From IMG/VR virus record IMGVR_UViG_3300044796_000657, positions 62,001 to 126,000 of that record: DNA of 64,000 nt; one strand, given 5' to 3'. Position 1 is the first letter of the stretch, and each line of letters opens with the position of its first letter. Shown here one piece after another: positions 4,318 to 54,484 of this stretch. Under the pieces are notes generated by a model that saw only the letters and a program-made list of their open reading frames with translations, was not told where the DNA came from and made no database searches. The position numbers and the translations under genes are program-made.

Positions 4318-5095
4318 TGGTTGTTTGGCTTTCTGTCTCTTATGATCTTTAACAGCATCTTTATCGTTGAGACGCCTAATTGTTCGACTGACATTACAAC
4401 CACGAATGCCAACCAAACAAACGCCCAAATTGGCAGCGTAACGAATAGTATAAGTACCATCGCTTTCTTTTGTCGCTTTGTAAGACATTAGATTTTACCT
4501 ATTCTGTCTCGGTTGTAGGAGGCAGTCATGTCCTCTTGATCGGTGGTCGTGACGACATTGCTGCCTTCAAACGCCACGATGGTATACACTTCCCCTACCG
4601 TCAAAGGAGCATATTTACCAGTGTAGCCTGTTGGCTTCTGAAGCAATCGTACCGACTCCCCCACTTTGAAGGTAGGATGTTTGATGGTCTTGCCGTGGGC
4701 CGGGCAAAAACCAACTTGATCGCACTTACAGACGACACCGGGACAAACAGCTTTGCCATTGTCGCCAAGGATATAATCGAGCATCTTAAGCATGTGCTGA
4801 CTCCGGTTTGTTGGTATCAATCATTGCCACGATTTTGCGAAGCCTTGTGATGTCCTGCGTTTCAAGCCAGTTCATCGGCAAGGATGAAATTAACAGTAAC
4901 CCCAAATTGAAGGCTTCATCACAAGTCAGAACGAGTTCCAATTCCCGATCCTTGATTGCCGCTGGCCCTGCTGTCACCTTTTGTTTGACATAAAGGCGAG
5001 TTACACCGTCAGTAATGGCGTTGCGGCGTGATGAAATCGGGTTCGTAACCAGTTGTGATGTTGTATCTTTCATGACAGCCTCTTGTTAACGTGAG

Positions 5096-5109
5096 GGGTG
5101 TATGGTCAC
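5096..5109 (-). promoter_or_regulatory. 14-bp element
   Basis: Exact copy; contains stop of 5106..5741. Confidence 0.85.
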
Positions 5110-5741
5110 TCAGGGATGGTAGCCAATATCGTATCAATATCGGCCAATTGGCCTTTGGTTACATGGGCTTGTCGTTCAAACAGATTGCCGAGATGCGGCC
5201 ATACGTGATCAGGAGTGATGCCATTACGCCAAGCCCGCAAACGTTGAGCGGCACCTTGAACTTTTTTGTTAGGCAAGTGTAGTTGGGCACATACATTCCA
5301 AATTGTTCCAATATGATCTTCGTAATCTGGATCTGACTCTGTGAATTGTTGAGCCTGCGTTGTGATCAATGGCTTGTTGCGAACACATCGCCCAAGGATT
5401 GTTCGGCACTTTTTGGCCGTTTCTTCCAATCCATAGTTAACACGATATTTGGGATCGAGTTCGTTAGGGGACATCCACGTTGACGCACCAGTACGAGCAA
5501 CGCTGATTTCATCTTCTGCCATACAGTCAAAATTTCCGACAAACGGTGCTGTGTCCATTGGAACAATGAGATACATATCATCAATGATGTTAACTACCAA
5601 CCATGACAATCCAATTGGATCGGTAAGGTCGGGCAGTACAAACACATCACCGATAGCAGCCGGGCCGTCTTTGGGCGGCTTGGCATTGGTGAGCTTAGCT
5701 GCGGCATCAGCAACGGCGGCTTTGATTTTGGTGGTGTTCAT
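5106..5741 (-). CDS. Hypothetical protein (probably leaderless)
   Basis: 211-aa ORF flanked by two elements; ATG at +9. Confidence 0.7.
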   Translation of the reverse strand: MNTTKIKAAVADAAAKLTNAKPPKDGPAAIGDVFVLPDLTDPIGLSWLVVNIIDDMYLIVPMDTAPFVGNFDCMAEDEISVARTGASTWMSPNELDPKYRVNYGLEETAKKCRTILGRCVRNKPLITTQAQQFTESDPDYEDHIGTIWNVCAQLHLPNKKVQGAAQRLRAWRNGITPDHVWPHLGNLFERQAHVTKGQLADIDTILATIPE

Positions 5742-5749
5742 AACTCTCC

Positions 5750-5763
5750 GGGTGTATGGTCAC
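5750..5763 (-). promoter_or_regulatory. 14-bp element
   Basis: Exact copy; contains stop of 5760..6086; ATG at +9. Confidence 0.85.
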
Positions 5764-6086
5764 AGTTGAGTTTTGCGGCCAGTGAGTACATTCACAACAA
5801 CTTCATTTTGTCCGAAAGCCGCACGCATTTCGTACATCTCTTCGGCGGTTGGTTCAACGCCTTCTTGCTGTTGACGATATTCTTTAACGAATGCTTGAAT
5901 CTCTTGTGATTGCGCCAATTTTTGGGCCGCACGATCTACCGGAATACCGTAAGATTCGCAGGAGTCCAATGGGCAGCAGCGATCCGTTTCCACCCATCGC
6001 CAAACCTTACCATCATCGGTATAGGCTTGACTGTCAAATGTCCAATTGCTATGACTTTTGGTGAAAGTTTCAGTGCGTCGTGCCAT
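5760..6086 (-). CDS. Hypothetical protein
   Basis: ORF between two elements; likely start MARRTE. Confidence 0.65.
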   Translation of the reverse strand: MARRTETFTKSHSNWTFDSQAYTDDGKVWRWVETDRCCPLDSCESYGIPVDRAAQKLAQSQEIQAFVKEYRQQQEGVEPTAEEMYEMRAAFGQNEVVVNVLTGRKTQL

Positions 6087-6128
6087 TTGAATACTCGGTG
6101 AGAGAGGATGTAACCAAGTTAACAAGTA

Positions 6129-6142
6129 GGGTGTATGGTCAC
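6129..6142 (-). promoter_or_regulatory. 14-bp element
   Basis: Exact copy. Confidence 0.85.
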
Positions 6143-7097
6143 TAAATGCCAATGCTTTTTATCATTTGTTTATACTTTGTGGATTTTGATTTCAATTGGA
6201 GGGCAGTGCGTATGACTACCTTGGCAGCAATACGTTTGAAGGCGAAGGATTTGTCCTTAAGTATTTCCGTGATTTGGAAAATGGTAAGAATTTCCTCCAA
6301 GAAAATCTCATCTTCTGGCTTCGATGCCCGCAAAACTGGAAGATTCTTCAATAGATCAAAGGCACGAACGAGTTGTTCATCGGTCACTGGGTTCTGGGGT
6401 ATTTTCATGGCATCCACGCAATGAATTTACAAGTTAGGGTAAGTTCGATTCGTTGGATTTCATCTTCACGACAATACACAACGAACCGAATGCCGTGTTC
6501 AAACATCGCTTTGCGAAACATTGGAATTCACCTCAGCCCGTGAAAGAACGTATCGGATGTCACCAAAGATTGTTAAGATCATATCATCGGCGTCTTTGAA
6601 ATCGCCATTACCAACATATCTGAGAATGAGACGTTGGCTCCTGTCGCTGTATGGAACACAAACATACTTCAATCCCATCACAAGGCTTCCAATTTCAAGA
6701 TAGCTCATGGCATCCTACCGGTAAAGGGGAACAATCATTTCTTCAACAGTAGTAGTTATGAAGACATCACCCTTATTAACAGTATTGCGGTTGCCTCGTT
6801 CGTAAGCGTATTCGCCAACAGCGATTTTGCGGTAAATGGCGTGGGGTTCGGGAATGAAGCAGAACAGATCGTTAACATTCAAGCCGCTGAATGGAATAGC
6901 CATGCCTTCATTGACAAAGCGGGAAATTGTTATCAGTCTGGGGTGTTCGGTATTGTTGCGATTGATCTTGATAGCACAAGACTCGCAATAGAGTCGATGA
7001 TCAAGTGAGTGATGGCAATTATCGTGGGGATTGGTACACCGAGTTACCGAACACTTAGGATTTTCTGGCATTGTTTATTCCTCATTGGTACCTATTA

Positions 7098-7111
7098 GGG
7101 TGTATGGTCAC
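7098..7111 (-). promoter_or_regulatory. 14-bp element
   Basis: Exact copy; contains stop of the GNAT gene. Confidence 0.85.
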
Positions 7112-8171: not shown

Positions 8172-8546
8172 TTAAGCCGCTTTACGGCATTGTTGAATGG
8201 CGGTTGCAACCTGAATGAGTTCATCGATGCTGCCGATTTCCTTTGCCGCTTTTTCCACAATGGAAATTTGGCCGATGGCACGATACAAACTACCATCGAG
8301 AATTTGCGGCGGCTTTACTTCCAAGCCAACCTTAATTCGCTCATCGGTAGAACGCAATTCACCCTTGCGAACCCGATTGCGAAGTTCGCTGAGGTAGTTC
8401 TTATTGTAGATCAACTTTAACTTCAACTTGATGTATGCCGCCAACTGAGTAGCACTTTTGATTGGCTTTTGTTTTTCGGTTTCAACAATCAAATCCACAA
8501 CGGATTGTTGTGTCGGACGATCAGTTTTTTTGGAAAGATTTTTCAT
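8172..8546 (-). CDS. Small basic putative DNA-binding (HTH-like) protein; resembles 57371..57718
   Basis: SATQLAAYIKLKLKLIYNKNYLSELR plus C-terminal helical hairpin. Confidence 0.55.
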   Translation of the reverse strand: MKNLSKKTDRPTQQSVVDLIVETEKQKPIKSATQLAAYIKLKLKLIYNKNYLSELRNRVRKGELRSTDERIKVGLEVKPPQILDGSLYRAIGQISIVEKAAKEIGSIDELIQVATAIQQCRKAA

Positions 8547-8585
8547 GACAAGCATCTCGTAAGGAAGTTGAGGGAACATCATGGA

Positions 8586-8599
8586 GGGTGTATGGTCAC
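8586..8599 (-). promoter_or_regulatory. 14-bp element
   Basis: Exact copy; contains stop of 8596..9222. Confidence 0.85.
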
Positions 8600-9222
8600 A
8601 ACACAATTTCCGACTCAGCAAATTCTTGATCCCTAATCGCCCATTGTTCCTCTCGGATACCCTCCCAAAAGGCGTTAGCGTTTAATTCATAAACCTTACT
8701 AATTGCCAGAGCAACTGCTCTAGCAATTTCTGGATTGTGGCCTTCCTCCACTTCATCCACAGACGGCGGTTCAGTGTTGGAATATGTCTGATGGTATGAC
8801 GTCACCATCCAAGAGGCAATTTCTTCGGCAATCTCGCCACCGATGGTTTTACGAACAACTTCCACAACGCCAGCACCAATAGACAAGTATTCGCCGGACA
8901 AATACACGATCTTTTCGTCCGCATCAACTTTAATTTGATTCCATTTGTCGGGGAGAAGTTGGGATGCTGCGTTTTTGATCATCACCACAAGGGAAGTGAA
9001 GCCCTCTTGCAACTTGACAATAGCCGCATCATGATCTTCGATGGGCTTGTATTTTCGGATCTCTTGTGGAGCGACGACGCAAGTTTGATTGCCGTTTTCA
9101 AAGTGAACGGCATGGTGGCCAATTCCAAAGCATTTCTGATAGGTCATTTTGGCCCATCGAGGTTTGCTTTGAACCCCCAACTTGACAAACGCCTTAACTA
9201 TTTCACCCTTTTTGAACTTCAT
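8596..9222 (-). CDS. Hypothetical protein
   Basis: 208-aa ORF; GAGGA SD. Confidence 0.7.
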   Translation of the reverse strand: MKFKKGEIVKAFVKLGVQSKPRWAKMTYQKCFGIGHHAVHFENGNQTCVVAPQEIRKYKPIEDHDAAIVKLQEGFTSLVVMIKNAASQLLPDKWNQIKVDADEKIVYLSGEYLSIGAGVVEVVRKTIGGEIAEEIASWMVTSYHQTYSNTEPPSVDEVEEGHNPEIARAVALAISKVYELNANAFWEGIREEQWAIRDQEFAESEIVL

Positions 9223-9247
9223 GACAAATCCTCATTGGTACCAATGA

Positions 9248-9261
9248 GGGTGTATGGTCAC
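9248..9261 (-). promoter_or_regulatory. 14-bp element
   Basis: Exact copy; overlaps a 20-bp palindrome at 9230-9249. Confidence 0.85.
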
Positions 9262-9265
9262 TTGA

Positions 9266-9493
9266 TTATTCGGCTTCGGCTTCGGCTTCGGCTTCGTTGA
9301 TTTCAGAAGTGATTCTTTCGGCGGCTTTGTGTGCTTCAATGGCAGCGTCACAAACGGTTTCCGCTTCGCCTGATGCCTCTTGATTATTGGAATAGCGAGC
9401 CAAGACGCCAACACCACGCCAACGAACTTCCCATCCCCACGTACCGTTTTTGTTGTTCAAAATCAGATTCAAGCCACCGTCAATATTATTCAT
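9266..9493 (-). CDS. Hypothetical protein ending in an EA repeat
   Basis: Start MNNIDG after GAGGA SD. Confidence 0.6.
   Translation of the reverse strand: MNNIDGGLNLILNNKNGTWGWEVRWRGVGVLARYSNNQEASGEAETVCDAAIEAHKAAERITSEINEAEAEAEAE
9269..9296. repeat. 6-bp tandem repeat (TTCGGC, about 4.7 units), encoding EAEAEAE
   Basis: Seen directly. Confidence 0.9.
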
Positions 9494-9520
9494 GGCATAT
9501 CCTCTTGGGTATGCCATGAT

Positions 9521-9534
9521 GGGTGTATGGTCAC
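9521..9534 (-). promoter_or_regulatory. 14-bp element
   Basis: Exact copy; contains stop of the CCA-enzyme gene. Confidence 0.85.
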
Positions 9535-10226: not shown

Positions 10227-10241
10227 GCCTTTTGTAACCAG

Positions 10242-10255
10242 GGATGTATGGTCAC
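10242..10255 (-). promoter_or_regulatory. 14-bp element (variant GTGACCATACATCC)
   Basis: One mismatch; C/A at +8/+9. Confidence 0.8.
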
Positions 10256-11017: not shown

Positions 11018-12352
11018 CTATTTTGGCATAATGAACAACTCGTCTGTTCCACGTGCTTCGCCATTTTGCCCCATTGATCGCTTTACATTTAACTTAATCA
11101 TTTTGTATTTAGAATAACGTTTTCGTGATTCGGGATGATTGTCATAAGACAACAGCCAATTATCTTTTATTTCTAACAATTCAACTAAATCGTCATGGTC
11201 TACCATATCAAACTTACATCCGTAATATGATGTGGTTTTTTCTAGGTCGCTGAAATAGGGCGGATCAAGATATATTTTCCCCTTTGCCAATGCTACCACT
11301 TCACGAAAATCCTGATTGGTAATACGAACACCTTGGAGTAGTCGTGAGGCGTTATTGAATTTTTCAATTTTCAAGCTATCACGACAATGGAATTTAGGGG
11401 CATAAACCTGACCTAATTGGCCAAAACTGTATACCATTTTGTAATAGAACTTCCACGCCAGTTCTTCGGTACTACCGGCCTTATCAGCACGGATTTGATT
11501 GCGATACTCTTTCCATCGTTCTTTATCTGGTTGATCCTTGGCGATTTGCGAAATAAGATAGTCTGGATTATCTCTGACAGTAGTATGAAATGCCCACAAT
11601 GGTTTATAACCATCGTTCATCCAAATTTTAAGATTTGGATACAAACTCTTGGCCCACAAAGTCACTACCCCACCACCAGTACAAGCATCGCAAAACTCTG
11701 ATGCTTCGTTAAGATTTAAGTGCTTCATGATCTCTTCCCCTAATCGCCGTTTGCTACCCGGCCATGAAAGGGGAACGTTTTTCGTACAACTGAATTTATT
11801 GTCTTTTGCTCGTGACTCAAAGGCGCAATTATTTTTTGCAAACCAACCTAACTCTCTGGTAATGGGTTTTATGTGATTGATACCCAACTCTTTCGATGCT
11901 TGTTTCCAAAGTGTAATAGCAGGAGCATTATCATTGAGATACTTGATGGTTTTTCTGAAATTTGAACGAGCGGTACGAAATTGTGCTAATTCTTTTATTG
12001 AGTAAGGTGCAGGTTTGCCACTATAAAGATAACAAGCCAAACCAATATCCTCATTGGGGGAATCAAACATTGTTTGCAAACTGATCCATCCTTGGGATTT
12101 GGTATCATGCCAGACTGTTTGAAGATAATCCTTCATCCGACTTTTTGTCAACCACTCTTCAAATGTTTTGTTGTTTTGCTGCAAAGCGATATGACGAATG
12201 AAGTGAAGTGAAATTCCCATTTCACGATAATAGCTACCGGCTGTGGGAATACGTTGTAAATTGAGGGCGTTAACTTGACGAGCAAGTTTGCTTGAATCAA
12301 AGGGTTGTCTTGTTTTGGCAACATTGCAAATAGCATCGTACATTGCTAACAT
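11018..12352 (-). CDS. Dam/D12-class N6-adenine DNA methyltransferase with long N-terminal extension
   Basis: PLSWPGSK, DACTGGG, MND, YLDPPY, WLLSYD; start MLAMYD after GGAG SD. Confidence 0.85.
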   Translation of the reverse strand: MLAMYDAICNVAKTRQPFDSSKLARQVNALNLQRIPTAGSYYREMGISLHFIRHIALQQNNKTFEEWLTKSRMKDYLQTVWHDTKSQGWISLQTMFDSPNEDIGLACYLYSGKPAPYSIKELAQFRTARSNFRKTIKYLNDNAPAITLWKQASKELGINHIKPITRELGWFAKNNCAFESRAKDNKFSCTKNVPLSWPGSKRRLGEEIMKHLNLNEASEFCDACTGGGVVTLWAKSLYPNLKIWMNDGYKPLWAFHTTVRDNPDYLISQIAKDQPDKERWKEYRNQIRADKAGSTEELAWKFYYKMVYSFGQLGQVYAPKFHCRDSLKIEKFNNASRLLQGVRITNQDFREVVALAKGKIYLDPPYFSDLEKTTSYYGCKFDMVDHDDLVELLEIKDNWLLSYDNHPESRKRYSKYKMIKLNVKRSMGQNGEARGTDELFIMPK

Positions 12353-12386
12353 ATCCAACTCCTTTAGTACTACGTAACGAAATACG

Positions 12387-12415
12387 ACTATATCAAATAC
12401 GATCAACAATGTCAA
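12387..12415 (-). promoter_or_regulatory. sigma70-like promoter of the methylase
   Basis: TTGACA-17-TATAGT. Confidence 0.7.
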
Positions 12416-12437
12416 CAATATTCTTGCCATTTAACGT

Positions 12438-12466
12438 AAAAAGCCCCGTCAATGACGGGGCTTTTT
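12438..12466. terminator. Bidirectional intrinsic terminator
   Basis: AAAAAGCCCCGTCA-A-TGACGGGGCTTTTT. Confidence 0.85.
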
Positions 12467-12952: not shown

Positions 12953-13615
12953 TTACACATAGCACGGTGTATGGTCACTCGTACGGTTTGAGGCGTCACC
13001 AATTAATCTTTCTGGATAAAGGAAATGGCATGCAATGGGGCATTTGACATCTTCATCGGCTTTTCCTGTGTAAAGAACTAAAGCACTCGTCGGAATTGTG
13101 GGAGGAACAATCTTCTTTTTGTCCATCTTCCTTGCTATTGACCACGCTTCAAAAGCAACCACTTCCGCATCGGGATTCCGTTTTTCTTTATCCCACCACG
13201 CCTTAAAGAAAAGGATATTTTGTGCGTGTGCGGTTAACGCATTAGAAGTATCATGACACCATCCATGCAAGCCACGATCTTTCTGTTGTGGCGCATACGC
13301 CGTGACATAACGACCTTTCATCAAGCTAATGATTTCTTTCTTTCGCAATGGCGTTGAAGGCTTGCTGTGTTTTTTGGGCATTTTTCCTTTGATACACTCA
13401 CGAATGCTCATAACATCCGTAACAACAGTGATCCATTTTTCATTGGTGCTTTTCAAGGCATTAATAACTGCCCAATATTCTGCTGCTACGGAATCATTAT
13501 TGATTTCAGAGAAATGCAAACCATAATCATAAGTGCCATTAGATGCGCACCATGCCCATCCATAGAAATCACGGGTTGCGCTTCCGTCTGCGTAGATAAT
13601 CATAATGACACTCAA
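12953..13615 (-). CDS. RNase H-like protein
   Basis: IYADGS, AAEYWAVINAL, VVTD, HD: acidic catalytic pattern. Confidence 0.7.
   Translation of the reverse strand: MSVIMIIYADGSATRDFYGWAWCASNGTYDYGLHFSEINNDSVAAEYWAVINALKSTNEKWITVVTDVMSIRECIKGKMPKKHSKPSTPLRKKEIISLMKGRYVTAYAPQQKDRGLHGWCHDTSNALTAHAQNILFFKAWWDKEKRNPDAEVVAFEAWSIARKMDKKKIVPPTIPTSALVLYTGKADEDVKCPIACHFLYPERLIGDASNRTSDHTPCYV
12965..12978 (-). promoter_or_regulatory. 14-bp element (variant ...CACCG)
   Basis: One mismatch; T/G at +8/+9. Confidence 0.8.
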
Positions 13616-13656: not shown

Positions 13657-14136
13657 TATCAATTTGTGAATTTTTTGGCCGAGATGGTGGCTAGATTTGA
13701 TGAGTTAACTCGCTTTGGATTTGTGGGGTCATGATCCCATACCACCGTGGCTACGACTACTCCGTTCACTGTTTGTGTATCGATGACAGTGCCACGCCAT
13801 CGGTGGAGATCACCCCCACCGATGGATTGAAGAAACTGAACAGAGTAGGCAACTCTCATGACTTAACCTTTGGGTTTGACGAGAGCCAAATGAACACCAA
13901 TCCAATTCCACGCCTCTTCGGTCGTATCGAAGTATGGTGTTCGACCTTCATACGTGTCCTGCACAAATTCACCAGTCTCGCTCTCGCTGTGCATATGCCA
14001 TGTCTCGACTTTGGCTTTCTTGCCTTCGAGAACGTGAAGGCGAAAATCCATACAACCACCAGCGAAGGTGACAATCGTCATGGATTCGGGTTCACTTGCT
14101 GCCGTCATGAGTTAACTCCTGTGGGGGTTTGAACAC

Positions 14137-14691
14137 TTATGTGGGTGTATGGTCACGCTTGGGCATAATATCCCAATCCACACTCAACCATTCCCCCGCT
14201 TGAATGAACGTTTCTCCTCGTTCTTTAATAGTGCGATAGGTGTCTGCTAACGCAAGAGCCATGCGATCCGGACGACCAATTTCAGAAGTGGGAACTGCCC
14301 TGCTAATCGTTCCAGTCTTACTGCCAAAGGTAGTGACGATAGCACTCTCTGTATGTCGTGGAGCAACCTTGCTGTGGCCGTGGTTGGGAGTAGCAAGATA
14401 CGGACAAACCTTTGCCGCATATGTTGCACATTCAAGGTGCATTGGCCCATCAACGAAACGCCGATGCTTCATACACTTCGGCCCACCAATGAAGGCGAAC
14501 GGAGGCATCATTCTTTGACCGCAAAGATGGCAAAGGTTTTTATTTAACGCTTCTGTTCGGTGAGCTTGATGGACAACCTTGAAGTCTGGTATTTTGTCTT
14601 CCCCAACGAAGACTGTGTAGTGAACCACATATCCCCTGTAGAGAGGGAATTTTTTCATACGTTCGGGAATAGGAATGGCAGAAATTTCCAT
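14137..14691 (-). CDS. Hypothetical Cys/His-rich protein
   Basis: CHLCG, FIGGP, PMHLECA, CPYL. Confidence 0.7.
   Translation of the reverse strand: MEISAIPIPERMKKFPLYRGYVVHYTVFVGEDKIPDFKVVHQAHRTEALNKNLCHLCGQRMMPPFAFIGGPKCMKHRRFVDGPMHLECATYAAKVCPYLATPNHGHSKVAPRHTESAIVTTFGSKTGTISRAVPTSEIGRPDRMALALADTYRTIKERGETFIQAGEWLSVDWDIMPKRDHTPT
14143..14156 (-). promoter_or_regulatory. 14-bp element
   Basis: Exact copy inside the 3' end of 14137..14691. Confidence 0.85.
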
Positions 14692-15643
14692 GTTAACTAC
14701 TTTCTTTCTCGGAGGGACGTTGTGTTAGTTGATCGAAGGCGTCAAGGAGAGCAGGAATATCCCTCTCCAGCAGTATTGTGATTGCTTCCGTTTTGTTGTG
14801 AAAATCCGAACCGGGGCCGAAGCCACCAATCCGCCTCATCAACGTAGTTAACTTTTCCGGATCGGACAAAAAGATCGTATGAACAACTTGAAGCCGTTCA
14901 CGAACTTTATCACGATATTTCTTTTTCGGAATAATCATCTAGCACCTTTGTGCTGAAGGTACCGAAACATAACCACACCCATCACTATTAACAAAATGTA
15001 GAGTGCCACACCAATGAGAATGGATACCGTCATGGATTGAACGGGATTTTTGTAAACCATAATAACGGTTGCTGGTATGGTTACAAATAATCCCAACATC
15101 ATGTAAAGGAGTTCGCCGAGTTTCATATGTACCAACCTGTGTTGACGATGGAACCACAAGAAGTTAACTTACAATCAGCCAATTTGTATTTGGCAAATGA
15201 GGGATCGTACGTCTTTTCTGCTTTCTTGATACCAGTTTGTTTTTTCTTTGAAAGCATTTCTAATGCCTCTTGACGTTGAGGCCCACTCAACGTACCAACA
15301 TCATACTGTGAGTTAATGTTGGCAACTTCATTACCGAAGTTACTCTCCTCGTTTAATTCTCTTCTTTGAGTAGCAAGCCAATCAGTGAGCGTAGGCAATT
15401 CGCCGTAGAAAGGCTCCTCACCCAACAGGAAAGCCAAGTAACAGATTGTTTCACTGTCATCTTCACTGAGTTCACGGATTAGGCTATTAGCCATTTTGCC
15501 GTGACAGTTTGCGAAAAGCGATTTGTCGAATGCCGCCAACTCTTTTGTTGGAACTTGGTACAAGACAACCTTTGTGCCATCGTACCAAGCAATGAGGGTA
15601 TTTTTCATCCTGTTTTCCCCTATTGGTTTCCGAACATCATAAC

Positions 15644-15657
15644 GGGTGTATGGTCAC
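15644..15657 (-). promoter_or_regulatory. 14-bp element
   Basis: Exact copy; contains stop of 15654..15866. Confidence 0.85.
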
Positions 15658-15891: not shown

Positions 15892-16443
15892 TTACAAGCT
15901 ACCTTCTGAAAACAAGGTTTCTTGGATAGCGGCATAATCATCGTAGGGCATCAACTGGATACCGATTTGAGCATCCCTGATGCATGCCCGCATCTCTTGA
16001 AACTTCATGATTTCTTGGCGAGGATCAAAATCCTTGAAAGTGGCATCGGATTTCAATTGCTCACAATACTTAATGTTGTCGTCAATTTCCTTGAAGCATT
16101 CTTCACGGTGTTCTTCGCTTCGGATTTTGCGACAAGATGTGAAGACCAGTAAAGCAAGCCCTTTATCTTTTTTGTCGCTACTCCAATCGGCAGCGTGGCT
16201 CAAAATGCGAGTGAGTTTAATTTCGTTGAACCGAATACACTTGGCAGGTTCGCCGTCTACAATCGGCACGATAGCCGAGAGCGATGAATTGAGGTTCGGA
16301 CACGCTGCGATGGCTGCAGTGAGGGTAGGAAATTGAGTGGCTTTTTCGTGACTGGAATGCCAATTGCCGGACCCCGGTTTGGGGCTGTGTTCGTAATATG
16401 ATCCGTTGCCGTTAATGTGATAAAGAGTGTAAACCTTCCCCAT
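15892..16443 (-). CDS. Hypothetical protein
   Basis: ORF; AGGAG SD. Confidence 0.65.
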   Translation of the reverse strand: MGKVYTLYHINGNGSYYEHSPKPGSGNWHSSHEKATQFPTLTAAIAACPNLNSSLSAIVPIVDGEPAKCIRFNEIKLTRILSHAADWSSDKKDKGLALLVFTSCRKIRSEEHREECFKEIDDNIKYCEQLKSDATFKDFDPRQEIMKFQEMRACIRDAQIGIQLMPYDDYAAIQETLFSEGSL

Positions 16444-16469
16444 GACACAACTCCTTTTAGTATCTATTG

Positions 16470-16483
16470 GGGTGTATGGTCAC
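16470..16483 (-). promoter_or_regulatory. 14-bp element
   Basis: Exact copy. Confidence 0.85.
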
Positions 16484-17771: not shown

Positions 17772-17794
17772 TTAGCCCGCCAATGGCGGGCTAA
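17772..17794. terminator. GC-rich hairpin after 17812..18105
   Basis: TTAGCCCGCCA-A-TGGCGGGCTAA; no clear U tract. Confidence 0.5.
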
Positions 17795-17811: not shown

Positions 17812-18105
17812 TTACTCTTCGTCGCCTGTTTCAACGGCGGCAGGAACGTCCTTCTTGGCCTTGACGGTGATTTGCAAGGACTTGTACGTTTTTCCCTTCC
17901 ATTCCCGATCAACTTCCGAAAATTGCATCTGCGGGAAGCAACGGATGAGGTAGTTTTTCAGAGCGGCATTGGATTTGCAGCGGCCTCGAACATGCTTGGA
18001 ATACTTGACGAGGAACATGACTTGCGCCGGGGTCATGTCTTCGGATTTGATGCCAAACGCCGCTTCGAACTCTTCCTTAACTTGGGGATTTTCAAATCGC
18101 ATCAT
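17812..18105 (-). CDS. Hypothetical protein with GC-rich codon usage
   Basis: AGGAG SD; lies between an element and a hairpin. Confidence 0.7.
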   Translation of the reverse strand: MMRFENPQVKEEFEAAFGIKSEDMTPAQVMFLVKYSKHVRGRCKSNAALKNYLIRCFPQMQFSEVDREWKGKTYKSLQITVKAKKDVPAAVETGDEE

Positions 18106-18146
18106 GACAATTGACTCCTGTGATGAATGGTTTGGAACACTGGATA

Positions 18147-18160
18147 GGGTGTATGGTCAC
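18147..18160 (-). promoter_or_regulatory. 14-bp element
   Basis: Exact copy; contains stop of 18157..18435. Confidence 0.85.
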
Positions 18161-19267: not shown

Positions 19268-19291
19268 AACATCCCCTCAGTGTACCAATTT

Positions 19292-19305
19292 GGGTGTATG
19301 GTCAC
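19292..19305 (-). promoter_or_regulatory. 14-bp element
   Basis: Exact copy. Confidence 0.85.
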
Positions 19306-20192: not shown

Positions 20193-20206
20193 GGGTGTAT
20201 GGTCAC
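20193..20206 (-). promoter_or_regulatory. 14-bp element
   Basis: Exact copy; contains stop of 20203..20451. Confidence 0.85.
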
Positions 20207-21268: not shown

Positions 21269-21282
21269 TGGTGTATGGTCAC
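21269..21282 (-). promoter_or_regulatory. 14-bp element (variant ...CACCA)
   Basis: One mismatch; contains stop of 21279..21662. Confidence 0.8.
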
Positions 21283-21662
21283 ACCTTGGCGACGGCGGTG
21301 GTGGCGATGTAAGCCGATTTGATAAGATCGTCCAATTCTTGGAAGAGGGGGTTGTCGCCGAAGATGGCACTTGAATGACTATCAACGGCTTCCGAGGCAT
21401 TCTTGAAATCCGAACGACTCACGCTGATACACTTGGAGTGTTCTGAGTGTTGAAGGATGTACGTTTTGCCGTCGTCGCCGTCCACGATGGCAGCAGGCCC
21501 GCCGTAGGTATGGTATTTCATTGCGCCGGTAGTTTGACGACTGACCCGGCTTCCCTTTTTGGGATTGTGTTCAACGATGAATTTGCATACCCCACGCTTG
21601 TTTCCACCCAAAGGCCAATCGGTGAATTCGGCTTGAAGGCGAGCGTTGCTGAACTTAACCAT
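21279..21662 (-). CDS. Hypothetical protein
   Basis: ORF between two elements. Confidence 0.7.
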   Translation of the reverse strand: MVKFSNARLQAEFTDWPLGGNKRGVCKFIVEHNPKKGSRVSRQTTGAMKYHTYGGPAAIVDGDDGKTYILQHSEHSKCISVSRSDFKNASEAVDSHSSAIFGDNPLFQELDDLIKSAYIATTAVAKV

Positions 21663-21698
21663 GATGAACTCTAAATGGGTTGTTTCTTATAACTGTGA

Positions 21699-21712
21699 GG
21701 GTGTATGGTCAC
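21699..21712 (-). promoter_or_regulatory. 14-bp element
   Basis: Exact copy. Confidence 0.85.
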
Positions 21713-25941: not shown

Positions 25942-25955
25942 GGGTGTATGGTCAC
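25942..25955 (-). promoter_or_regulatory. 14-bp element
   Basis: Exact copy; contains stop of 25952..26425. Confidence 0.85.
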
Positions 25956-27265
25956 TTGGCTTCGACAAGTGCTTCGACAAGTGCGGGCGGCGACATTTCA
26001 AGACGCTTGTAGAATTTGGCGATTTGTTCCTCACTATCTGGTCGCCAGCCGAACGCTTCGGTGGCAATTTGAGCAATCAGATCATGGGATTGCTTCATCA
26101 GCCAGTCTTTCATATCCAGTCGCACAACCTCATACCAAACCGGTTTGGATTTGGATTTATACGGGCCACGGAAGTGAATGAAGCGACCCTTGGGGGTGAA
26201 TGTCCAATCCGTGTCCGTAGCCAGCACGGAAAAATTGGTTTGGAAGTCCTTGAGCGTCATATGCTCATCGGCTTCGGGATTAACTGCCCGAAGTAGTTTC
26301 CGCACCTTTTTCTTCAACAATTTCACCCCATTGCCCAGAGCGAGGTGACATTCCGCCGTGATCGGGATCAGCCCTTTGAGTGGGCCATCCGTCGCCAGAA
26401 AGTCGGTTAAGTTGCGCCATGCCATTGTTTATTCCCGTAAGGACTAACAGAAGAAATACCAAACAGCCAAACATTACAAGTCGAGATCGACCTTGTAGCC
26501 ACGTTGCTAGATCGTATTGAACAACGTCCAGCATGAATTCAAATTCACAATTTTCGCACGTTTCATACATTACAATTTTTACCATTTTTTTCAAGACTTG
26601 TCAAGAAAAAAATCAACAATTTTATATTCCTTTGTATAGATTCTTTCTTGGCAAGCGAAACAACCTCGAAAGCACAAAAAACACAATGGTGGAGGCCAAA
26701 AATCTGAAACGAGTTTGTAATGATAATACTTATTATCTTTGCCTATCATCATAATGTGGGGAACAATTCGCCCTCGCCAAAGTATGATTGGCTTAAATTT
26801 TCGCAACCACAATGCGAGAACAATGGCTCCGATAAGACAATTACCGTATGGCATGTTAATTTACCTTTCGATAAACAATCCAAAACCTTTTTCCGCTCGG
26901 TTCTGACACCAGACAACTTTTGTCCCCACCAAACCTCATGAGATTAACAGCATCGGCTTTGTGTTTACAAAAAGAAAGAGTATAATTTTTGGCTGCTGCC
27001 ATTAACGCAGCAATCGCATGATAGCAAATACTTGAACGAAGTCCCTTGCAGTGACCTTTATCTGAACAGCACGATTTGACAATGAGTAGATTGGCTTCAC
27101 CCAAACCATCAACACGATCAAATTCAACACTGTACAATTCGCTGTCATGGCCGGGCACTGTCGCATGGACAATACGACCCCTCTCATCGAAAGCACAAAG
27201 CCGCACGAATTCGGCGGCTTTCTTGGCACTTTCTATATTCATTGTCATTCCCCTATTGTCAATTA

Positions 27266-27279
27266 GGGTGTATGGTCAC
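27266..27279 (-). promoter_or_regulatory. 14-bp element
   Basis: Exact copy; contains stop of 27276..27767. Confidence 0.85.
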
Positions 27280-28429: not shown

Positions 28430-28443
28430 GGGTGTATGGTCAC
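28430..28443 (-). promoter_or_regulatory. 14-bp element
   Basis: Exact copy. Confidence 0.85.
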
Positions 28444-29624: not shown

Positions 29625-30404
29625 TCATTTGCCATGATGGGGAAAATAGGTTCTAGCAGCTTCTGTTTGATTATGAGCTGGCATCAAGGTTTCAAGAATT
29701 TCCACAATGTTGATAGGTCGATACCAAACATCCCAACCACAATCAAACGCACAAAAGATGCCGGGCAACTCACCGTGACTGTGACCATACAAGTTAATGC
29801 TGCGTGGTGGCTTCCCGCCTTCGATTGCTTGTCGATTGTGCTGTGACTTATTCCAAACCCTCATACTGTAATGAGTACACGTTAAGAGACTGCCTTTATA
29901 GACGATAGGGATTTTATGCTGATCGCAGAGCTTCCCTGACAACTGCAACTCAAATCCCATAGGGTGAATACCTTCAATGTATTCAGTCTCGCTCACCTCA
30001 TGGCACCGAGGGCATTTCTTTTCAAATGCCTCATTCTTATCAACGTGAAGGCAATTCAAGCATTGTTTTTGCCAGCGAAACAATTTCCAAACCGGTTGAT
30101 TACGAACTAATACGCCATCTCTTTTAACGAATATCCTATCGTGATTGCCACCAACCCAAATGATGTGTTTACAGTTAATGTTGTTCAAGTATTCTTGGAC
30201 TTTGGCAACATAAGCGAATTCATCATCCAATTCACCGGGCAAACCCAAATCGCCATTGTAGATGAACAAATCATCCGGTTTGACGTATTCGTTTGTGACT
30301 TCATAGATGTGTTTATTCATTGCGGCAGCATCGACATAAGGGCGTTTGCTGTACCGGATAACGTTGTTGTGATCAAGATGATAATCAGAACTATGCCAAA
30401 TCAT
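29625..30404 (-). CDS. Calcineurin-like metallophosphoesterase with Zn-ribbon insert
   Basis: SDYH, GDLG, GNHD, THY, GHSH; CLNC...CPRC insert; start MIWHSS after GAGG SD. Confidence 0.85.
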   Translation of the reverse strand: MIWHSSDYHLDHNNVIRYSKRPYVDAAAMNKHIYEVTNEYVKPDDLFIYNGDLGLPGELDDEFAYVAKVQEYLNNINCKHIIWVGGNHDRIFVKRDGVLVRNQPVWKLFRWQKQCLNCLHVDKNEAFEKKCPRCHEVSETEYIEGIHPMGFELQLSGKLCDQHKIPIVYKGSLLTCTHYSMRVWNKSQHNRQAIEGGKPPRSINLYGHSHGELPGIFCAFDCGWDVWYRPINIVEILETLMPAHNQTEAARTYFPHHGK

Positions 30405-32665: not shown

Positions 32666-32679
32666 GGGTGTATGGTCAC
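32666..32679 (-). promoter_or_regulatory. 14-bp element
   Basis: Exact copy. Confidence 0.85.
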
Positions 32680-34613: not shown

Positions 34614-34644
34614 ATCTGCCGCCCGGTTAAACCGGGCGGCAGAT
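34614..34644. terminator. Perfect GC-rich inverted repeat
   Basis: ATCTGCCGCCCGGTT-A-AACCGGGCGGCAGAT; no U tract. Confidence 0.5.
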
Positions 34645-35610: not shown

Positions 35611-35624
35611 GGGTGTATGGTCAC
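35611..35624 (-). promoter_or_regulatory. 14-bp element at the strand switch
   Basis: Exact copy; T/G at +8/+9. Confidence 0.85.
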
Positions 35625-38873: not shown

Positions 38874-38909
38874 GAATAATGCCAACAAGAAATCTTGTTG
38901 GCATTATTC
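38874..38909. terminator. Long AT-rich inverted repeat
   Basis: GAATAATGCCAACAAGA-AA-TCTTGTTGGCATTATTC. Confidence 0.6.
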
Positions 38910-40772: not shown

Positions 40773-40808
40773 AAATAACGCCAACATTAGTTGGCGTTAT
40801 TTTTTTTT
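40773..40808 (+). terminator. Intrinsic terminator
   Basis: AAATAACGCCAAC-ATTA-GTTGGCGTTATTT plus T tract. Confidence 0.8.
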
Positions 40809-52255: not shown

Positions 52256-52776
52256 AGACCTTTTTCGTTTGGTAAAGCCTTGCGAGCCAATTCTTTTTCA
52301 AGCAGTCGCTTCAAGATCGGTTCGGGAACCAGTTTCTTCAAGCACCTTATTTCTAAATCACTTACATCTTTGGTCAAATCCCTTACCAAAGATGAACTGA
52401 AATCGCTTATCTTGTCCGGTGAAACAATGTAGACCGTAGTTAACTCCGGCCACTTGTCTTGATTGTAATTCTGTAACGCTTTTTCGCCACTGAAGTCATT
52501 GGCAGAACGCATTCCTCGTATCAAAACAGGAATATTCATCTTCTTGGCAAATTCCCACAAATACATCTTGGGATAACCGACAACTTCCACGTTCGGCAAA
52601 TCAATTGCCGACTTAACCATTTCCACCCGCTCTTCATTCGTGAAAGCGTAATTCTTATCTTCGTTGTCGCCAATGCCAACAACGAGCTTGTCGGTTAACT
52701 TGGCAGCGGTTTCAATCAGCCAAAAATGGCCGTAATGAGGGGGATTTGCTGACAATGGAAAGATGGCACTTTTCAT
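52252..52776 (-). CDS. coaD: Phosphopantetheine adenylyltransferase
   Basis: AIFP.SANPPHYGH, K...F..EERVEM, IRGMR...DF..E, SSSLVR. Confidence 0.85.
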   Translation of the reverse strand: MKSAIFPLSANPPHYGHFWLIETAAKLTDKLVVGIGDNEDKNYAFTNEERVEMVKSAIDLPNVEVVGYPKMYLWEFAKKMNIPVLIRGMRSANDFSGEKALQNYNQDKWPELTTVYIVSPDKISDFSSSLVRDLTKDVSDLEIRCLKKLVPEPILKRLLEKELARKALPNEKGL

Positions 52777-53579
52777 GACATTCTCCTTAGTACCTGCTAC
52801 GGTATTTGTTTTCAGGAGGCTTGGCGTTGCCTCGTTTCATTGGCGTGATGACGGGCTTGTAGTTGGGGATTTTGGTGTTACGACAATGAGGACATTCAAC
52901 CGTCACGTAATGAGGTTCAATATCCTTGAAGCATTTGGCGCAAACCAAACCACCACCGACCGAAGCGAATGATTGATGCGACTCATTAACAAATTCCAAT
53001 GGTGTTCGCACCAAAGCATAAGGATGAGTCGTAGATGGTTGAAATCTTCCGATTTTCAACACATTGCAAAGTTGTTCGTGTCGATCATCAAGTGCGCCGG
53101 GAAATCGGCGATTAATGATTTCATTCACAGCGACTTCGTCGTTATCATTACAGATGGCATTGTATTGGCCACCGTTAACTTTGATGTGAATCATGACACT
53201 CCTCTTTTCGCTCGTTCGAGTCTGGTTTTTGCGGATTCCATATCCCGCTGCGCCCGTTCAAGTTGATATTTGGCTTCACGAAGTTTTTGCTGCTCTTTAG
53301 CTGTTGCTTTTCTTAGCAACGCTTTGGCAACACGTTCCGACTCGTCAATCACTTCCACAACACCAACACCCAACTTGAGGATTGTTGGAATGGGATAAGC
53401 GGGATTACTGGAGAAGTATGTTACCGCCGCCCTTGCCGGGCCGAGCTTAACATAAATCCTTGCCGTCTTAATGTCGTCAACCCATGAACTTCCGTATCCG
53501 TAATGTCCTTTACGTCGAAAGAACTGACCTGTGCTGTTCTGGACAACGTAAAAGAACAATTCGCTCAAGTCGGGGGCAC

Positions 53580-54086
53580 TCATGCCTTTGCCTTTTTGTA
53601 GAGCATATGCCCACGATGATCAAGTTTCTCAAACGACTTGGGCCAATATCGTTTGAACAAGTTGAGTGACCATTTACAGGCACCAACTTCCCCATGTCCA
53701 AGAGTATGTGCAAATTCATGCAAAAATACAACTACAGAATATTCGCCATCAGCATTTGGCTCAATAAGAATGACGGCGGGTTTACTTCGTAAACAACATG
53801 GCCCACAAGGAATTTTGTCTACGAACACCAATTTGGGTTCTGGGATTTCGTACACCTTGGCAAGTGCGGTATTGAGCGTCCGATACTTAACTTGGATTTC
53901 TTCAGGGGTGCCACGATATGGATTCATGGCCCGGAAGGCTTCAATAGCCTTACCGGTGCCACTGCGGTACTTCATTTCGTCGTCTAAGCACTCAACGACG
54001 GTTTTGGGATATGGATTCTTGGAAGGTTCATCAACCCGAACCAGTTCACCAAATAATTTGTTTAACTTGCCAAACAGTTTGCTCAT
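53580..54086 (-). CDS. Putative zinc metallopeptidase
   Basis: FLHEFAH...GE. Confidence 0.5.
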   Translation of the reverse strand: MSKLFGKLNKLFGELVRVDEPSKNPYPKTVVECLDDEMKYRSGTGKAIEAFRAMNPYRGTPEEIQVKYRTLNTALAKVYEIPEPKLVFVDKIPCGPCCLRSKPAVILIEPNADGEYSVVVFLHEFAHTLGHGEVGACKWSLNLFKRYWPKSFEKLDHRGHMLYKKAKA

Positions 54087-54451
54087 AAAAGCCCCATAGT
54101 GCGGGCCTCCGCTCGTATGGAGTCCCTCAGTGATTTCTTGGACTTTAGTATAAACAAACTGTCGGCAATACTCAAGGTCACAACATTGACCGTCGCAACA
54201 CCATCTGCGACCGCTCGACTAACAGTATGGTTGCCGTCAATTAAGTAATGACACACAACCTTATCAATTGGCAAAGACGCAAAGATTACGACTTTTAGCA
54301 AATCGGCGTGCAGCACGTGTACGGGATCGATATAGATCAAAGGTAACAGCCAATCCAAAGACGGAGCTTTTTTCTCCGGTTCGTATTTAGCAGCCTTTTT
54401 CTTCGCCTCCGTGATATTAAACTTCAAATGTAGGAAAGTAAAAAATTCCAT
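54083..54451 (-). CDS. ParB/Srx-like domain protein (tentative)
   Basis: YLIDGNHTVSRA; GGAGG SD. Confidence 0.45.
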   Translation of the reverse strand: MEFFTFLHLKFNITEAKKKAAKYEPEKKAPSLDWLLPLIYIDPVHVLHADLLKVVIFASLPIDKVVCHYLIDGNHTVSRAVADGVATVNVVTLSIADSLFILKSKKSLRDSIRAEARTMGLL

Positions 54452-54470
54452 AGACACCTCCGATTTACGA

Positions 54471-54484
54471 GGGTGTATGGTCAC
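54471..54484 (-). promoter_or_regulatory. 14-bp element
   Basis: Exact copy; pyrimidine-purine step shifted by 1 nt. Confidence 0.8.

What the first reader, a model, noticed from the sequence alone, without database searches (positions are those of the whole stretch)
5073..54484. Element plus spacer pairs with the downstream SD/ATG: a possible promoter-dependent translation switch
Seen (minus strand): at 9230-9249 a perfect 20-bp palindrome, CCTCATTGGT|ACCAATGAGG, is centred exactly on the predicted +1 and covers the GAGG SD. At 9490-9519 TCATGGCATA pairs with TATGCCATGA, covering the ATG. At 27266, CCCTAATTG-A-CAATAGGG. At 54471, ACACCCTCG-TAAAT-CGGAGGTGT. At 5096, CCTCACGTT|AACAAGAGG. Read-through RNA from upstream would carry both arms and hide the RBS. 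RNA starting at +9 would lack most of the 5' arm and be translatable. Established: T4 uses this logic for a few late genes such as lysozyme e and soc. Inference: here it may be built into the promoter itself through its C-rich end.
Basis: partly seen in the sequence, partly recalled or inferred. Interest (0 to 1): 0.7.

Follow-up and report, generated by a model that had tools for sequence, protein, structure and literature searches.

The report
Phage promoter repeats; RBS-masking mostly incidental
A 430-kb peat phage carries about 100 identical promoter-like elements in front of its small genes; their pairing with the ribosome-binding sites is no better than controls, except at one or a few junctions, so it is not a switch built into the promoter.

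Summary
All five cited pairings are in the sequence. Only one stands out. At 9490-9519 the long RNA folds at -22.4 kcal/mol (z -3.2) and the short RNA at -1.8.

The element behind them is real. GTGACCATACA occurs 104 times, without variation, in a 430-kb phage record. It is co-oriented with genes and sits just upstream of SD+ATG. Six ORFs, five of them without an SD, begin exactly at element position 23, which is a purine in 91 of 104 copies.

I tested 57 SD-bearing junctions. The energy needed to open the RBS in read-through RNA is 6.00 kcal/mol. Controls give 5.78 (swapped promoters), 5.82 (shuffled spacers) and 5.50 (random 22-mers); none differs significantly. MFE z-scores match those of ordinary gene starts (-0.44 vs -0.45). 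The C-rich end adds about 1.1 kcal/mol, but SD types do not co-vary with it.

Verdict: this is a phage-specific promoter-leader module. Its complementarity to the SD is mostly a by-product of composition. A T4 e/soc-type gate is plausible at 9534 and possible at a few other junctions.

The parts
9490..9519 (-). Best candidate gate. The 5' arm UCAUGGCAUACCC lies at element positions 16-28 of the 9534 copy and straddles +1 at 9512. The 3' arm GGAUAUGCCAUGA covers the AUG (9493-9491). The SD GAGG lies partly in the loop and is partly paired.
   Evidence: 13-nt arms, 92%; long RNA -22.4 kcal/mol, z -3.22; short RNA -1.8; opening 16.06 vs 6.12 +/- 2.20 with swapped promoters
9230..9249 (-). Perfect 20-bp palindrome CCTCATTGGT|ACCAATGAGG, centred on the predicted +1 (9239) of the 9261 copy and covering the SD GAGG. 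The terminator scan also flags it as weakly terminator-like.
   Evidence: long RNA -17.8, z -1.92. RBS opening is only 5.6 vs 4.8 in the short RNA and 4.85 +/- 0.95 with swapped promoters.
27247..27268 (-). Imperfect pairing CCCUAAUUG-A-CAAUAGGG at the 27279 copy. Only 5 bp (CCCUA/UAGGG) form.
   Evidence: z -0.88; 7.19 vs 4.15 +/- 2.55
54449..54480 (-). Imperfect pairing at the 54484 copy. CACCCU pairs with GGAGGUG (SD) and CCAUA pairs with UAUGG (start codon).
   Evidence: -14.6 kcal/mol, z -1.86; 11.93 vs 8.28 +/- 2.78
5079..5098 (-). Weak pairing CCUC/GAGG (4 bp) at the 5109 copy.
   Evidence: z +0.80; 5.33 vs 4.94 +/- 2.17
62807..62841 (-). The arm ACCCAUAAGUUU (element positions 11-22 of the 62851 copy, ending at -1) pairs with AAACUUAUGcGU, which holds the start codon. 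The SD lies in the loop. The stem is AU-rich and weak.
   Evidence: 12 nt, 92%; z -0.43; duplex -8.7 vs -3.7 swapped
306..319 (-). Element copy (GTGACCATACATCC). ATG at +1 (297); SD-less ORF of 288 aa.
1152..1165 (-). Element copy. +1 at 1143, ATG at 1128.
1955..1968 (-). Element copy. +1 at 1946, ATG at 1927.
2768..2781 (-). Element copy. ATG at +1 (2759); SD-less ORF of 103 aa.
4304..4317 (-). Element copy. +1 at 4295, ATG at 4269.
5096..5109 (-). Element copy. +1 at 5087, ATG at 5073. The TGA at positions 2-4 is the stop codon of the upstream 211-aa ORF.
5750..5763 (-). Element copy. ATG at +1 (5741); ORF of 211 aa. GGAG lies at positions 15-18.
6129..6142 (-). Element copy. +1 at 6120, ATG at 6086.
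7098..7111 (-). Element copy. +1 at 7089, ATG at 7071. Its leader shares GGTACCAATGAGGA with the 9261 copy, although the downstream proteins are unrelated.
8586..8599 (-). Element copy. +1 at 8577, ATG at 8546.
9248..9261 (-). Element copy. +1 at 9239, ATG at 9222.
9521..9534 (-). Element copy. +1 at 9512, ATG at 9493.
10242..10255 (-). Element copy (TCC variant). +1 at 10233.
12965..12978 (-). Element copy (CCG variant). +1 at 12956; long leader.
14143..14156 (-). Element copy. +1 at 14134, ATG at 14108.
15644..15657 (-). Element copy. +1 at 15635, ATG at 15608.
16470..16483 (-). Element copy. +1 at 16461, ATG at 16443. CCCCA pairs with UGGGG at the start codon (opening 11.4 vs 5.9).
18147..18160 (-). 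Element copy. +1 at 18138, ATG at 18105.
19292..19305 (-). Element copy. +1 at 19283, ATG at 19267.
20193..20206 (-). Element copy, followed directly by a perfect sigma70-like promoter (TTGACA-17-TATAAT, 20182-20154).
21269..21282 (-). Element copy (CCA variant). +1 at 21260, ATG at 21243. TGGTTAACCA palindrome at +1.
21699..21712 (-). Element copy. +1 at 21690, ATG at 21662.
25942..25955 (-). Element copy. +1 at 25933, ATG at 25911.
27266..27279 (-). Element copy. +1 at 27257, ATG at 27242.
28430..28443 (-). Element copy. +1 at 28421, ATG at 28397. A possible extended -10 host-type promoter (TTGACT-17-TAGGCT) abuts its 5' edge.
   Evidence: read directly from the sequence
32666..32679 (-). 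Element copy. +1 at 32657, ATG at 32641.
35611..35624 (-). First element copy of the minus-strand block. +1 at 35602. A sigma70-like promoter lies downstream at 35591-35564. An RNA-run contig ends at 35598.
54471..54484 (-). Element copy. +1 at 54462, ATG at 54451.
54800..54813 (-). Element copy. ATG at +1 (54791); SD-less ORF of 92 aa.
62544..62557 (-). Element copy. ATG at +1 (62535); SD-less ORF of 205 aa.
62838..62851 (-). Element copy. +1 at 62829, ATG at 62812.
63257..63270 (-). The only plausible functional variant (GTGACCATACCCCT), followed by SD + ATG.

Best explanation
GTGACCATACA(CCC), together with a position-specific downstream part (A-6, T-5, G-3, K-2, T-1, R+1, A+4, A+5), is a phage-specific promoter. 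Its transcription start is at element position 23. It is fused to a short consensus leader (A[A/C]CAA-GAGG-N7-ATG). This promoter-leader module sits in front of about 100 mostly unrelated small genes in the 28-172 kb block of a 430-kb phage.

The promoter ends in C's and the leader holds a G-rich SD. The start region also has a weak dyad (TGGT|ACCA or GTT|AAC). Read-through RNA can therefore often pair the promoter's 3' part with the SD. For most junctions this pairing is an incidental, weak by-product of about 0.5-1 kcal/mol. It is not a co-evolved translation switch.

A true T4 e/soc/I-TevI-type gate is likely at the 9534 junction only, and possible at a handful of others (54484, 16483, 62851; outside the window, genome 32680 and 128503). 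In such a gate, RNA from upstream promoters is masked and RNA from the gene's own promoter is open.

Shown: the sequences, the copy statistics, the folding statistics and the leaderless ORF starts. Inferred: that the element is a promoter, that +1 is position 23, and that a phage sigma factor or an unrecognised factor reads it.
For: Evidence that the element is a promoter:
- 104 exact 11-mers, 87 on the gene strand. It is the most over-represented k-mer in the genome.
- The 5' edge is sharp and the downstream conservation is position-specific.
- Only 7 one-mismatch variants exist, against 6.8 expected by chance.
- ATG falls exactly at position 23 in six copies, each opening an ORF of 72-288 aa, five without an SD. 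Position 23 is a purine in 91/104 copies and position 22 is T in 70/104.
- An RNA contig ends 4 nt from the predicted +1 of the 35624 copy, about 41 nt upstream of where the sigma70-like promoter would start.
- There is no general RNA hairpin within the element: stable in 12.5% of copies, and the reversed control gives the same MFE.

Evidence that the pairing is incidental:
- RBS opening energy is 6.00 native, 5.78 swapped (p 0.53), 5.82 spacer-shuffled (p 0.55) and 5.50 with a random 22-mer (p 0.49).
- Ranks of native junctions among swapped ones are uniform, KS p 0.22.
- Duplex energy is -7.40 native against -6.74 swapped, p 0.37.
- The increment from adding 22 upstream nt is 1.69 kcal/mol, against 1.01 in non-element genes, p 0.23.
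- MFE z is -0.44, against -0.45 at ordinary gene starts.
- G-run SDs are equally common behind CCC and non-CCC copies (15/38 vs 9/19) and are not enriched against neighbouring genes.

Evidence for the 9534 gate. Strong sigma70-like promoters lie upstream on the same strand (11015, 12415), and an RNA contig crosses the junction.
Against: - Everything is in silico. No transcript 5' ends were mapped, because the run is held only as contigs.
- A class-level effect is not excluded. Changing C12-14 to AAA lowers RBS opening by 1.1 kcal/mol (p 8e-4).
- The promoter arm is more complementary to the leaders than random 14-mers (-7.40 vs -5.44, p 2e-5) and slightly more than shuffled spacers (p 0.016).
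- Element genes are about 0.9 kcal/mol more occluded than non-element genes in long RNA (p 0.03).
- Four junctions rank first of 57 among swapped partners, where about one is expected.
- The promoter geometry (-22 to -9) does not fit the -35/-10 spacing of sigma70-family factors, and no phage RNA polymerase was found.
Confidence: 0.65

Rival explanations
1. The promoter's C-rich end plus spacer is a built-in anti-SD, so at every junction read-through RNA is translationally masked and only promoter-initiated RNA is translated.
For: - The consensus shows a dyad about +1 in short-leader copies: 5.97 of 11 pairs, against 4.1 for random sequence.
- C12-14 contribute 1.1 kcal/mol.
- The promoter arm pairs with leaders better than random 14-mers do.
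- Long RNAs cost 1.7 kcal/mol more to open than short ones.
Against: - Random upstream 22-mers give nearly the same cost (+1.2 vs +1.7 kcal/mol, p 0.49).
- Non-element genes show a similar increment (p 0.23).
- There is no excess structure compared with ordinary gene starts.
- SD type does not co-vary with CCC.
- Copies at 32-46 kb carry ACC, GCC, GGC or AGC in place of CCC.
- Most upstream promoters belong to the same class, so masking read-through would give no temporal switch.
Confidence: 0.12
2. The dyad at the start site (TGGT|ACCA, GTT|AAC, and the 20-bp palindrome at 9230-9249) acts on DNA. It is either an operator for a dimeric regulator that shuts these promoters off, or an intrinsic requirement of the polymerase at the initiation site. 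RNA pairing is then irrelevant.
For: - Positions 21 and 24 co-vary (G-C or T-A; 0.55 against 0.32 swapped). These central bases would lie in the loop of any RNA hairpin, so RNA pairing cannot explain the co-variation.
- The centre of symmetry stays at 22|23 in both subtypes.
- Operators that overlap promoters are known for T4 I-TevI (PMC2988022).
Against: - The dyad is weak and mostly lies in the consensus.
- With a fixed centre, all 104 copies show no site-specific excess (z -0.05).
- Subtypes may simply be lineages of a duplicated module.
- No regulator was identified.
Confidence: 0.15
3. The element is not a promoter but an RNA-level signal. A sequence-specific endoribonuclease cuts polycistronic RNA at 22|23, which would also produce the leaderless AUG ends.
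For: - The 11-mer is invariant in an all-or-none way (104 exact copies, and one-mismatch variants at the chance level).
- No cognate polymerase was found.
- RNA contigs cross the elements.
Against: - The element has no conserved hairpin.
- The semi-conserved part is fixed in register, with the Y-1/R+1 pattern typical of start sites.
- Copies occur in tandem arrays upstream of a helicase gene and at the head of the gene block (35624), where there is no upstream transcription on that strand; RNA coverage stops there.
- A possible host-type promoter that abuts the 28443 copy would start inside the element.
Confidence: 0.08

Closest known systems
T4 e (lysozyme), soc, gene 49 and I-TevI: RBS-sequestering hairpins relieved by a late promoter placed inside the hairpin (PMC3014915, PMC2988022)
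   Same: At 9534 the 5' arm lies upstream of, and across, the predicted +1. The 3' arm covers the AUG and part of the SD. Host-type promoters lie upstream on the same strand. The short transcript is unstructured.
   Different: In T4 the gate separates two temporal promoter classes at a few specific genes, and it has been verified by experiment. Here it was proposed as a property of every copy of one promoter, and the controls do not support that. Nothing has been verified by experiment.
Highly conserved phage-specific promoters, such as the T7/SP6-type 17-23 bp promoters and the T4 late TATAAATA (own knowledge; T4 late promoter in PMC3014915)
   Same: Many near-identical copies, co-oriented with genes and immediately upstream of the RBS. 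There is a sharp upstream boundary and a defined distance to +1.
   Different: No single-subunit or multisubunit phage polymerase was detected; only two sigma70-family ORFs were found. The conserved block lies at -22 to -9, which fits neither -35/-10 spacing nor the T4 late -10-only layout. 104 copies show no variation in 11 positions.
PeSL cassettes of T4-like phages: a promoter-early plus stem-loop that flanks ORFans and mediates modular shuffling (PMC2839356, PMC4122927)
   Same: A short conserved regulatory module precedes unrelated small ORFs in a hyperplastic region. Identical promoter-leader stretches are attached to unrelated proteins: there is only 1 paralogous pair among 63.
   Different: A stem-loop is not a general part of the module. 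Recombination at the element was not tested, because no relatives are available.

Membership tests
T4-type promoter-dependent RBS gate (e, soc, I-TevI) | A stable hairpin sequesters the SD and/or AUG in the long transcript | tested here: inconclusive
   Met at 9534 (-22.4 kcal/mol, z -3.22; opening 16.1 kcal/mol). Marginal at 9261 and 54484. Not met at 27279 and 5109. Not met in aggregate over 57 junctions.
T4-type promoter-dependent RBS gate (e, soc, I-TevI) | The gene's own promoter starts inside the hairpin, so the short RNA lacks the 5' arm | tested here: inconclusive
   +1 at position 23 is inferred from six ORFs that start exactly there (five of them SD-less), from R at 23 and T at 22, and from one RNA contig end. 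No 5'-end mapping was possible.
T4-type promoter-dependent RBS gate (e, soc, I-TevI) | Read-through from upstream promoters of another temporal class | tested here: inconclusive
   Strong sigma70-like promoters lie on the same strand. Terminators are few. RNA-run contigs cross the junctions, but contigs have no direction and DNA carry-over cannot be excluded.
T4-type promoter-dependent RBS gate (e, soc, I-TevI) | Long and short transcripts are translated differently | not testable with these tools
   Needs reporter fusions or toeprinting.
Phage-specific promoter | Many conserved copies, co-oriented with genes and directly upstream of them | tested here: met
Phage-specific promoter | A cognate polymerase or specificity factor is encoded by the phage | tested here: inconclusive
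   Two sigma70-family ORFs were found: 261 aa in the ORF at L116:190-975 (region-2 match at genome 144310-144447), and 173 aa in the ORF at L117:34-555 (region-2 match at genome 196021-196230), both on the minus strand. No PF00940, PF00562 or PF00623 hits, and no polymerase motifs in ORFs of 300 aa or more. The PF00940 search had no positive control.
Sigma70-family -35/-10 promoter | Two hexamers 16-18 bp apart, with +1 about 7 nt after the second | tested here: not met
   There is no conservation upstream of G1. With +1 at position 23 the conserved block spans -22 to -9.
N4-type hairpin promoter / structured RNA element | A conserved stem-loop within the element | tested here: not met
   Pairing of positions 1-9 with 16-24 is stable (-6 kcal/mol or lower) in 12.5% of copies. 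Reversing positions 15-27 gives the same mean MFE (-2.93 vs -2.96).
PeSL-like mobile regulatory cassette | A conserved promoter module flanks unrelated ORFs and marks indel or replacement boundaries between related phages | tested here: inconclusive
   The downstream genes are unrelated. No related genome was found for comparison.

The most novel reading that the evidence does not exclude
The promoter-leader module was shaped so that its C-rich 3' end and start-site dyad weakly mask the SD in every read-through RNA, by roughly 0.5-1 kcal/mol or 2-5 fold. Translation of each small gene in this huge phage would then depend mainly on its own promoter. This would be genome-wide translational insulation of cistrons, written into a promoter consensus.
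Probability: 0.12. Interest if true: 0.6.

Novelty: new member of a known kind. Interest (0 to 1): 0.3.

Why it matters
If the general switch were real, one promoter sequence would do two jobs: start transcription, and act as an anti-SD in upstream transcripts. That would be a new design principle for the long, terminator-poor gene arrays of huge phages. The evidence instead points to an ordinary picture. This is a new, unusually invariant phage promoter family with short or absent leaders, plus at most a few gene-specific T4-like gates. The useful outcomes are a precise promoter and +1 model for an uncultured 430-kb peat phage, and one well-defined junction (9534) that can be tested directly.

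Tried and rejected
- RNA hairpin within the element (positions 1-9 with 16-24) and an N4-like hairpin promoter. Rejected: stable in 12.5% of copies, and the reversed control is equal.
- Site-specific co-evolution of the two arms. Rejected by swapped-partner tests on opening energy, duplex energy and fixed-centre palindrome counts. There is only a marginal signal in short-leader copies (p 0.05), and it comes from the central pair 21/24, which cannot pair in RNA.
- SD types adapted to CCC. Rejected.
- T7-like, multisubunit, or motif-detectable polymerase. None found. The 993-aa ORF looks Ig-like and structural; the 1952-aa ORF gave nothing.
- Relatives for covariation. No blastn match to deposited phages. 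The 14-mer gives only single chance hits in IMG/VR. The 208-aa protein and the sigma factor have no relatives.
- RNA evidence. Only one metatranscriptome run exists, and it is held as contigs. No 5'-end pile-ups could be read.
- GTTAAC as a second promoter motif. It is over-represented 2.4-fold across the whole genome and is not specific.
- GUGAC pairing with GUCAU(G) at start codons. (G)TC before ATG is enriched, but element positions 1-5 pair with the RBS at only 3-5% probability.
- An apparent sigma70 promoter abutting the 32679 copy. On recount its spacer is 22 nt, so I dropped it.

Full report
**What is at the cited coordinates.** On the minus strand every cited site lies just downstream of the same 14-mer, GTGACCATACACCC. 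The 20-bp palindrome at 9230-9249 is perfect. The pairings at 27266, 54471 and 5096 are imperfect. Long RNAs, from 20 nt upstream of the element to 15 nt past the ATG, fold with z-scores of -3.22 (9534), -1.92 (9261), -0.88 (27279), -1.86 (54484) and +0.80 (5109) against dinucleotide shuffles. RNAs that start at element position 23 are essentially unstructured.

**The element.** The window is bases 62001-126000 of a 430,229-bp IMG/VR virus record from peat.
- The core GTGACCATACA occurs 104 times without variation in the genome, 87 of them on the minus strand. Nearly all copies lie between 28 and 172 kb. It is by far the most over-represented k-mer.
- One-mismatch variants number 7, against 6.8 expected by chance. 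Only one of them (window 63257-63270) looks functional.
- There is no conservation upstream of G1. Downstream conservation is fixed in register: C12-14, Y15, A17, T18, G20, K21, T22, R23, A26, A27.
- The TGA at positions 2-4 is the stop codon of the upstream ORF in 34 copies.
- The 63 downstream proteins are unrelated apart from one pair. Even so, stretches of promoter plus leader are shared, for example GGTACCAATGAGGA at 7111 and 9261. The unit is therefore a promoter-leader module placed in front of unrelated ORFans. This recalls the PeSL cassettes of T4-like phages (PMC2839356, PMC4122927).

**Where transcription starts.**
- In six copies an ATG begins exactly at position 23 and opens an ORF of 72-288 aa; five of these have no SD. 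Positions 20, 22, 24 and 25 carry no ATG at all, and position 19 carries only one, which opens no ORF.
- Position 23 is a purine in 91/104 copies and position 22 is T in 70/104.
- At the head of the minus-strand block (the 35624 copy) a contig of the metatranscriptome run ends at 35598. That is 4 nt from the predicted +1 (35602) and about 41 nt upstream of where the neighbouring sigma70-like promoter would start. No RNA contig covers 35599-35744.

The inference remains indirect, because the run is stored only as contigs.

**Which polymerase.** I found no T7-like or multisubunit polymerase, and no polymerase motifs. The genome encodes two sigma70-family proteins, of 261 and 173 aa, alongside terminase, a Pol III alpha-like protein, an aminoacyl-tRNA synthetase and others. 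A conserved block at -22 to -9 does not fit -35/-10 geometry, so the specificity factor is unresolved. Strong sigma70-like promoters (11-12 of 12 matches) all lie on the same strand, interspersed with the elements. Terminator-like sites are fewer than in shuffles. Read-through across junctions is therefore expected. RNA-run contigs do cross the elements at 5109, 5763, 8599, 9534 and 10255.

**Test of the switch.** I took the 57 copies followed by a recognisable SD and start codon. For each I computed the free energy needed to unpair the stretch from the SD to the AUG.

| RNA or control | Mean opening energy (kcal/mol) | p vs native |
|---|---|---|
| Starts at position 23 (short) | 4.31 | |
| Starts at position 1 (native) | 6.00 | |
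| Starts 40 nt further upstream | 6.70 | |
| Positions 1-22 taken from another copy | 5.78 | 0.53 |
| Spacer 15-22 shuffled | 5.82 | 0.55 |
| Element fully shuffled | 5.86 | 0.56 |
| Random genomic 22-mer in place of 1-22 | 5.50 | 0.49 |
| C12-14 changed to AAA | 4.90 | 8e-4 |

 The C-rich end therefore contributes about 1.1 kcal/mol. Further results:
- The rank of each native junction among 56 swapped partners is uniformly distributed (KS p 0.22). The top junctions are 9534 (z 4.5) and three outside the window: genome 32680, 37625 and 128503.
- A direct duplex measure between positions 9-22 and the leader gives -7.40 native, -6.74 swapped (p 0.37), -6.37 spacer-shuffled (p 0.016) and -5.44 for random 14-mers (p 2e-5).
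- Ordinary genes of the same genome, treated the same way, give 4.08, 5.08 and 5.75 kcal/mol. The increment from adding 22 upstream nt is 1.01 there against 1.69 for element genes (p 0.23).
- MFE z-scores of the junctions average -0.44, against -0.45 for ordinary gene starts. Only 3 of 57 are below -2.
- G-run SDs are equally frequent behind CCC (15/38) and non-CCC (9/19) copies, and are not enriched against neighbouring genes.

**Reading of the tests.** The arms have not co-adapted site by site, and junctions are not more structured than normal gene starts. What remains is a small class-level complementarity of roughly 0.5-1 kcal/mol. It follows from a C-rich promoter end facing a G-rich SD, and from a weak dyad at the start site. 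In the 33 short-leader copies the dyad about 22|23 scores 5.97 of 11 pairs, against 5.65 swapped and 4.1 random. The only site-specific part is the central pair 21/24 (GGT|AC or GTT|AAC). That pair would sit in the loop of any RNA hairpin, so it points to a DNA-level or lineage effect.

**What survives.** The 9534 junction has the full anatomy of the T4 e/soc/I-TevI gates (PMC3014915, PMC2988022).
- A 13-bp stem has its 5' arm straddling +1.
- The AUG and part of the SD are sequestered.
- The calculated difference between long and short RNA is 10 kcal/mol.
- Host-type promoters lie upstream on the same strand.
- An RNA contig spans the junction.

The perfect palindrome at 9230-9249 is striking as DNA, but it raises the calculated RBS opening cost by less than 1 kcal/mol. 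It may equally be a weak terminator-like insulator or an operator.

**Limits.**
- No related genome was found, so covariation between phages could not be examined.
- No transcript ends or translation data exist.
- Thermodynamic models ignore ribosomes and co-transcriptional folding.
- The host is unknown.

Noticed in passing
Whole genome G000, window included: Extreme palindrome avoidance. CGCG occurs 0 times against 917 expected. Thirteen 6-bp palindromes are entirely absent, each with 42-75 expected: ACGCGT, CCATGG, CCCGGG, CCGCGG, CGATCG, CGCGCG, CTCGAG, GCCGGC, GCGCGC, GCTAGC, GGATCC, GGGCCC and TCGCGA. GTTAAC is over-represented 2.4-fold.
   Followed up: partly
G000:C1 32208-32289, 34898-34980, 40269-40354, 45898-45983 (outside the window): Four units of 82-86 bp are bounded by two element copies facing each other. 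Their inner parts are conserved (TGAAAGAAACGG ... CTATTCAT). They could be convergent promoters, small antisense RNAs or MITE-like units.
   Followed up: partly
G000:C1 28763-29013 (+), 29803-29859 (+), 32030-32162 (-): Tandem arrays of the element core at 40-54 bp spacing lie in non-coding DNA, around and upstream of a UvrD-like helicase gene.
   Followed up: no
window 20182-20154, 12415-12387, 11015-10988, 3248-3220, 35591-35564, 30530-30502, 24383-24354 (all minus strand): Near-perfect sigma70-type promoters (11-12 of 12 matches) all point in the gene direction and are interspersed with the phage element. Two of them lie directly downstream of an element copy (20206, 35624).
   Followed up: partly
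Start codons of element-adjacent genes, genome-wide: (G)TC directly before ATG is enriched. GTC is found in 11/57 element genes against 7/99 neighbouring non-element genes (p 0.035); TC in 19/57 against 14/99 (p 0.0075). The cause is unknown.
   Followed up: partly
window 2952-3024 (-): tRNA-Met (CAT), downstream of a sigma70-like promoter at 3248-3220.
   Followed up: no
window 38874-38909, 34614-34644, 12438-12466, 40773-40802, 17772-17794: Perfect inverted repeats of 11-17 nt with loops of 1-4 nt. They are likely transcription terminators at the boundaries of gene blocks.
   Followed up: no
window 29781-29794 (+): A single plus-strand copy of the 11-mer core (GTGACCATACAAGT) lies inside a minus-strand phosphoesterase-like ORF. 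It is either an antisense promoter or a chance copy.
   Followed up: no
window 9262-9303 (-): A tandem GAAGCC hexanucleotide repeat encodes (Glu-Ala)n at the C-terminus of the ORF just upstream of the 9261 element. The read-laying tool skipped it as a repeat.
   Followed up: no
Sigma ORF at L116:190-975 (-), region-2 match at G000:C1:144310-144447: The protein database records this sigma factor on a contig of 614,480 bp. The IMG/VR record is 430 kb and is classed as 'provirus'. The true extent of the element, and whether it is integrated, is therefore uncertain.
   Followed up: no
window 56164-57114 (-), 11018-12430 (-): An HNH endonuclease and a DNA methyltransferase lie among the ORFans. Nearly all other small ORFs have no Pfam or PHROG match.
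   Followed up: no
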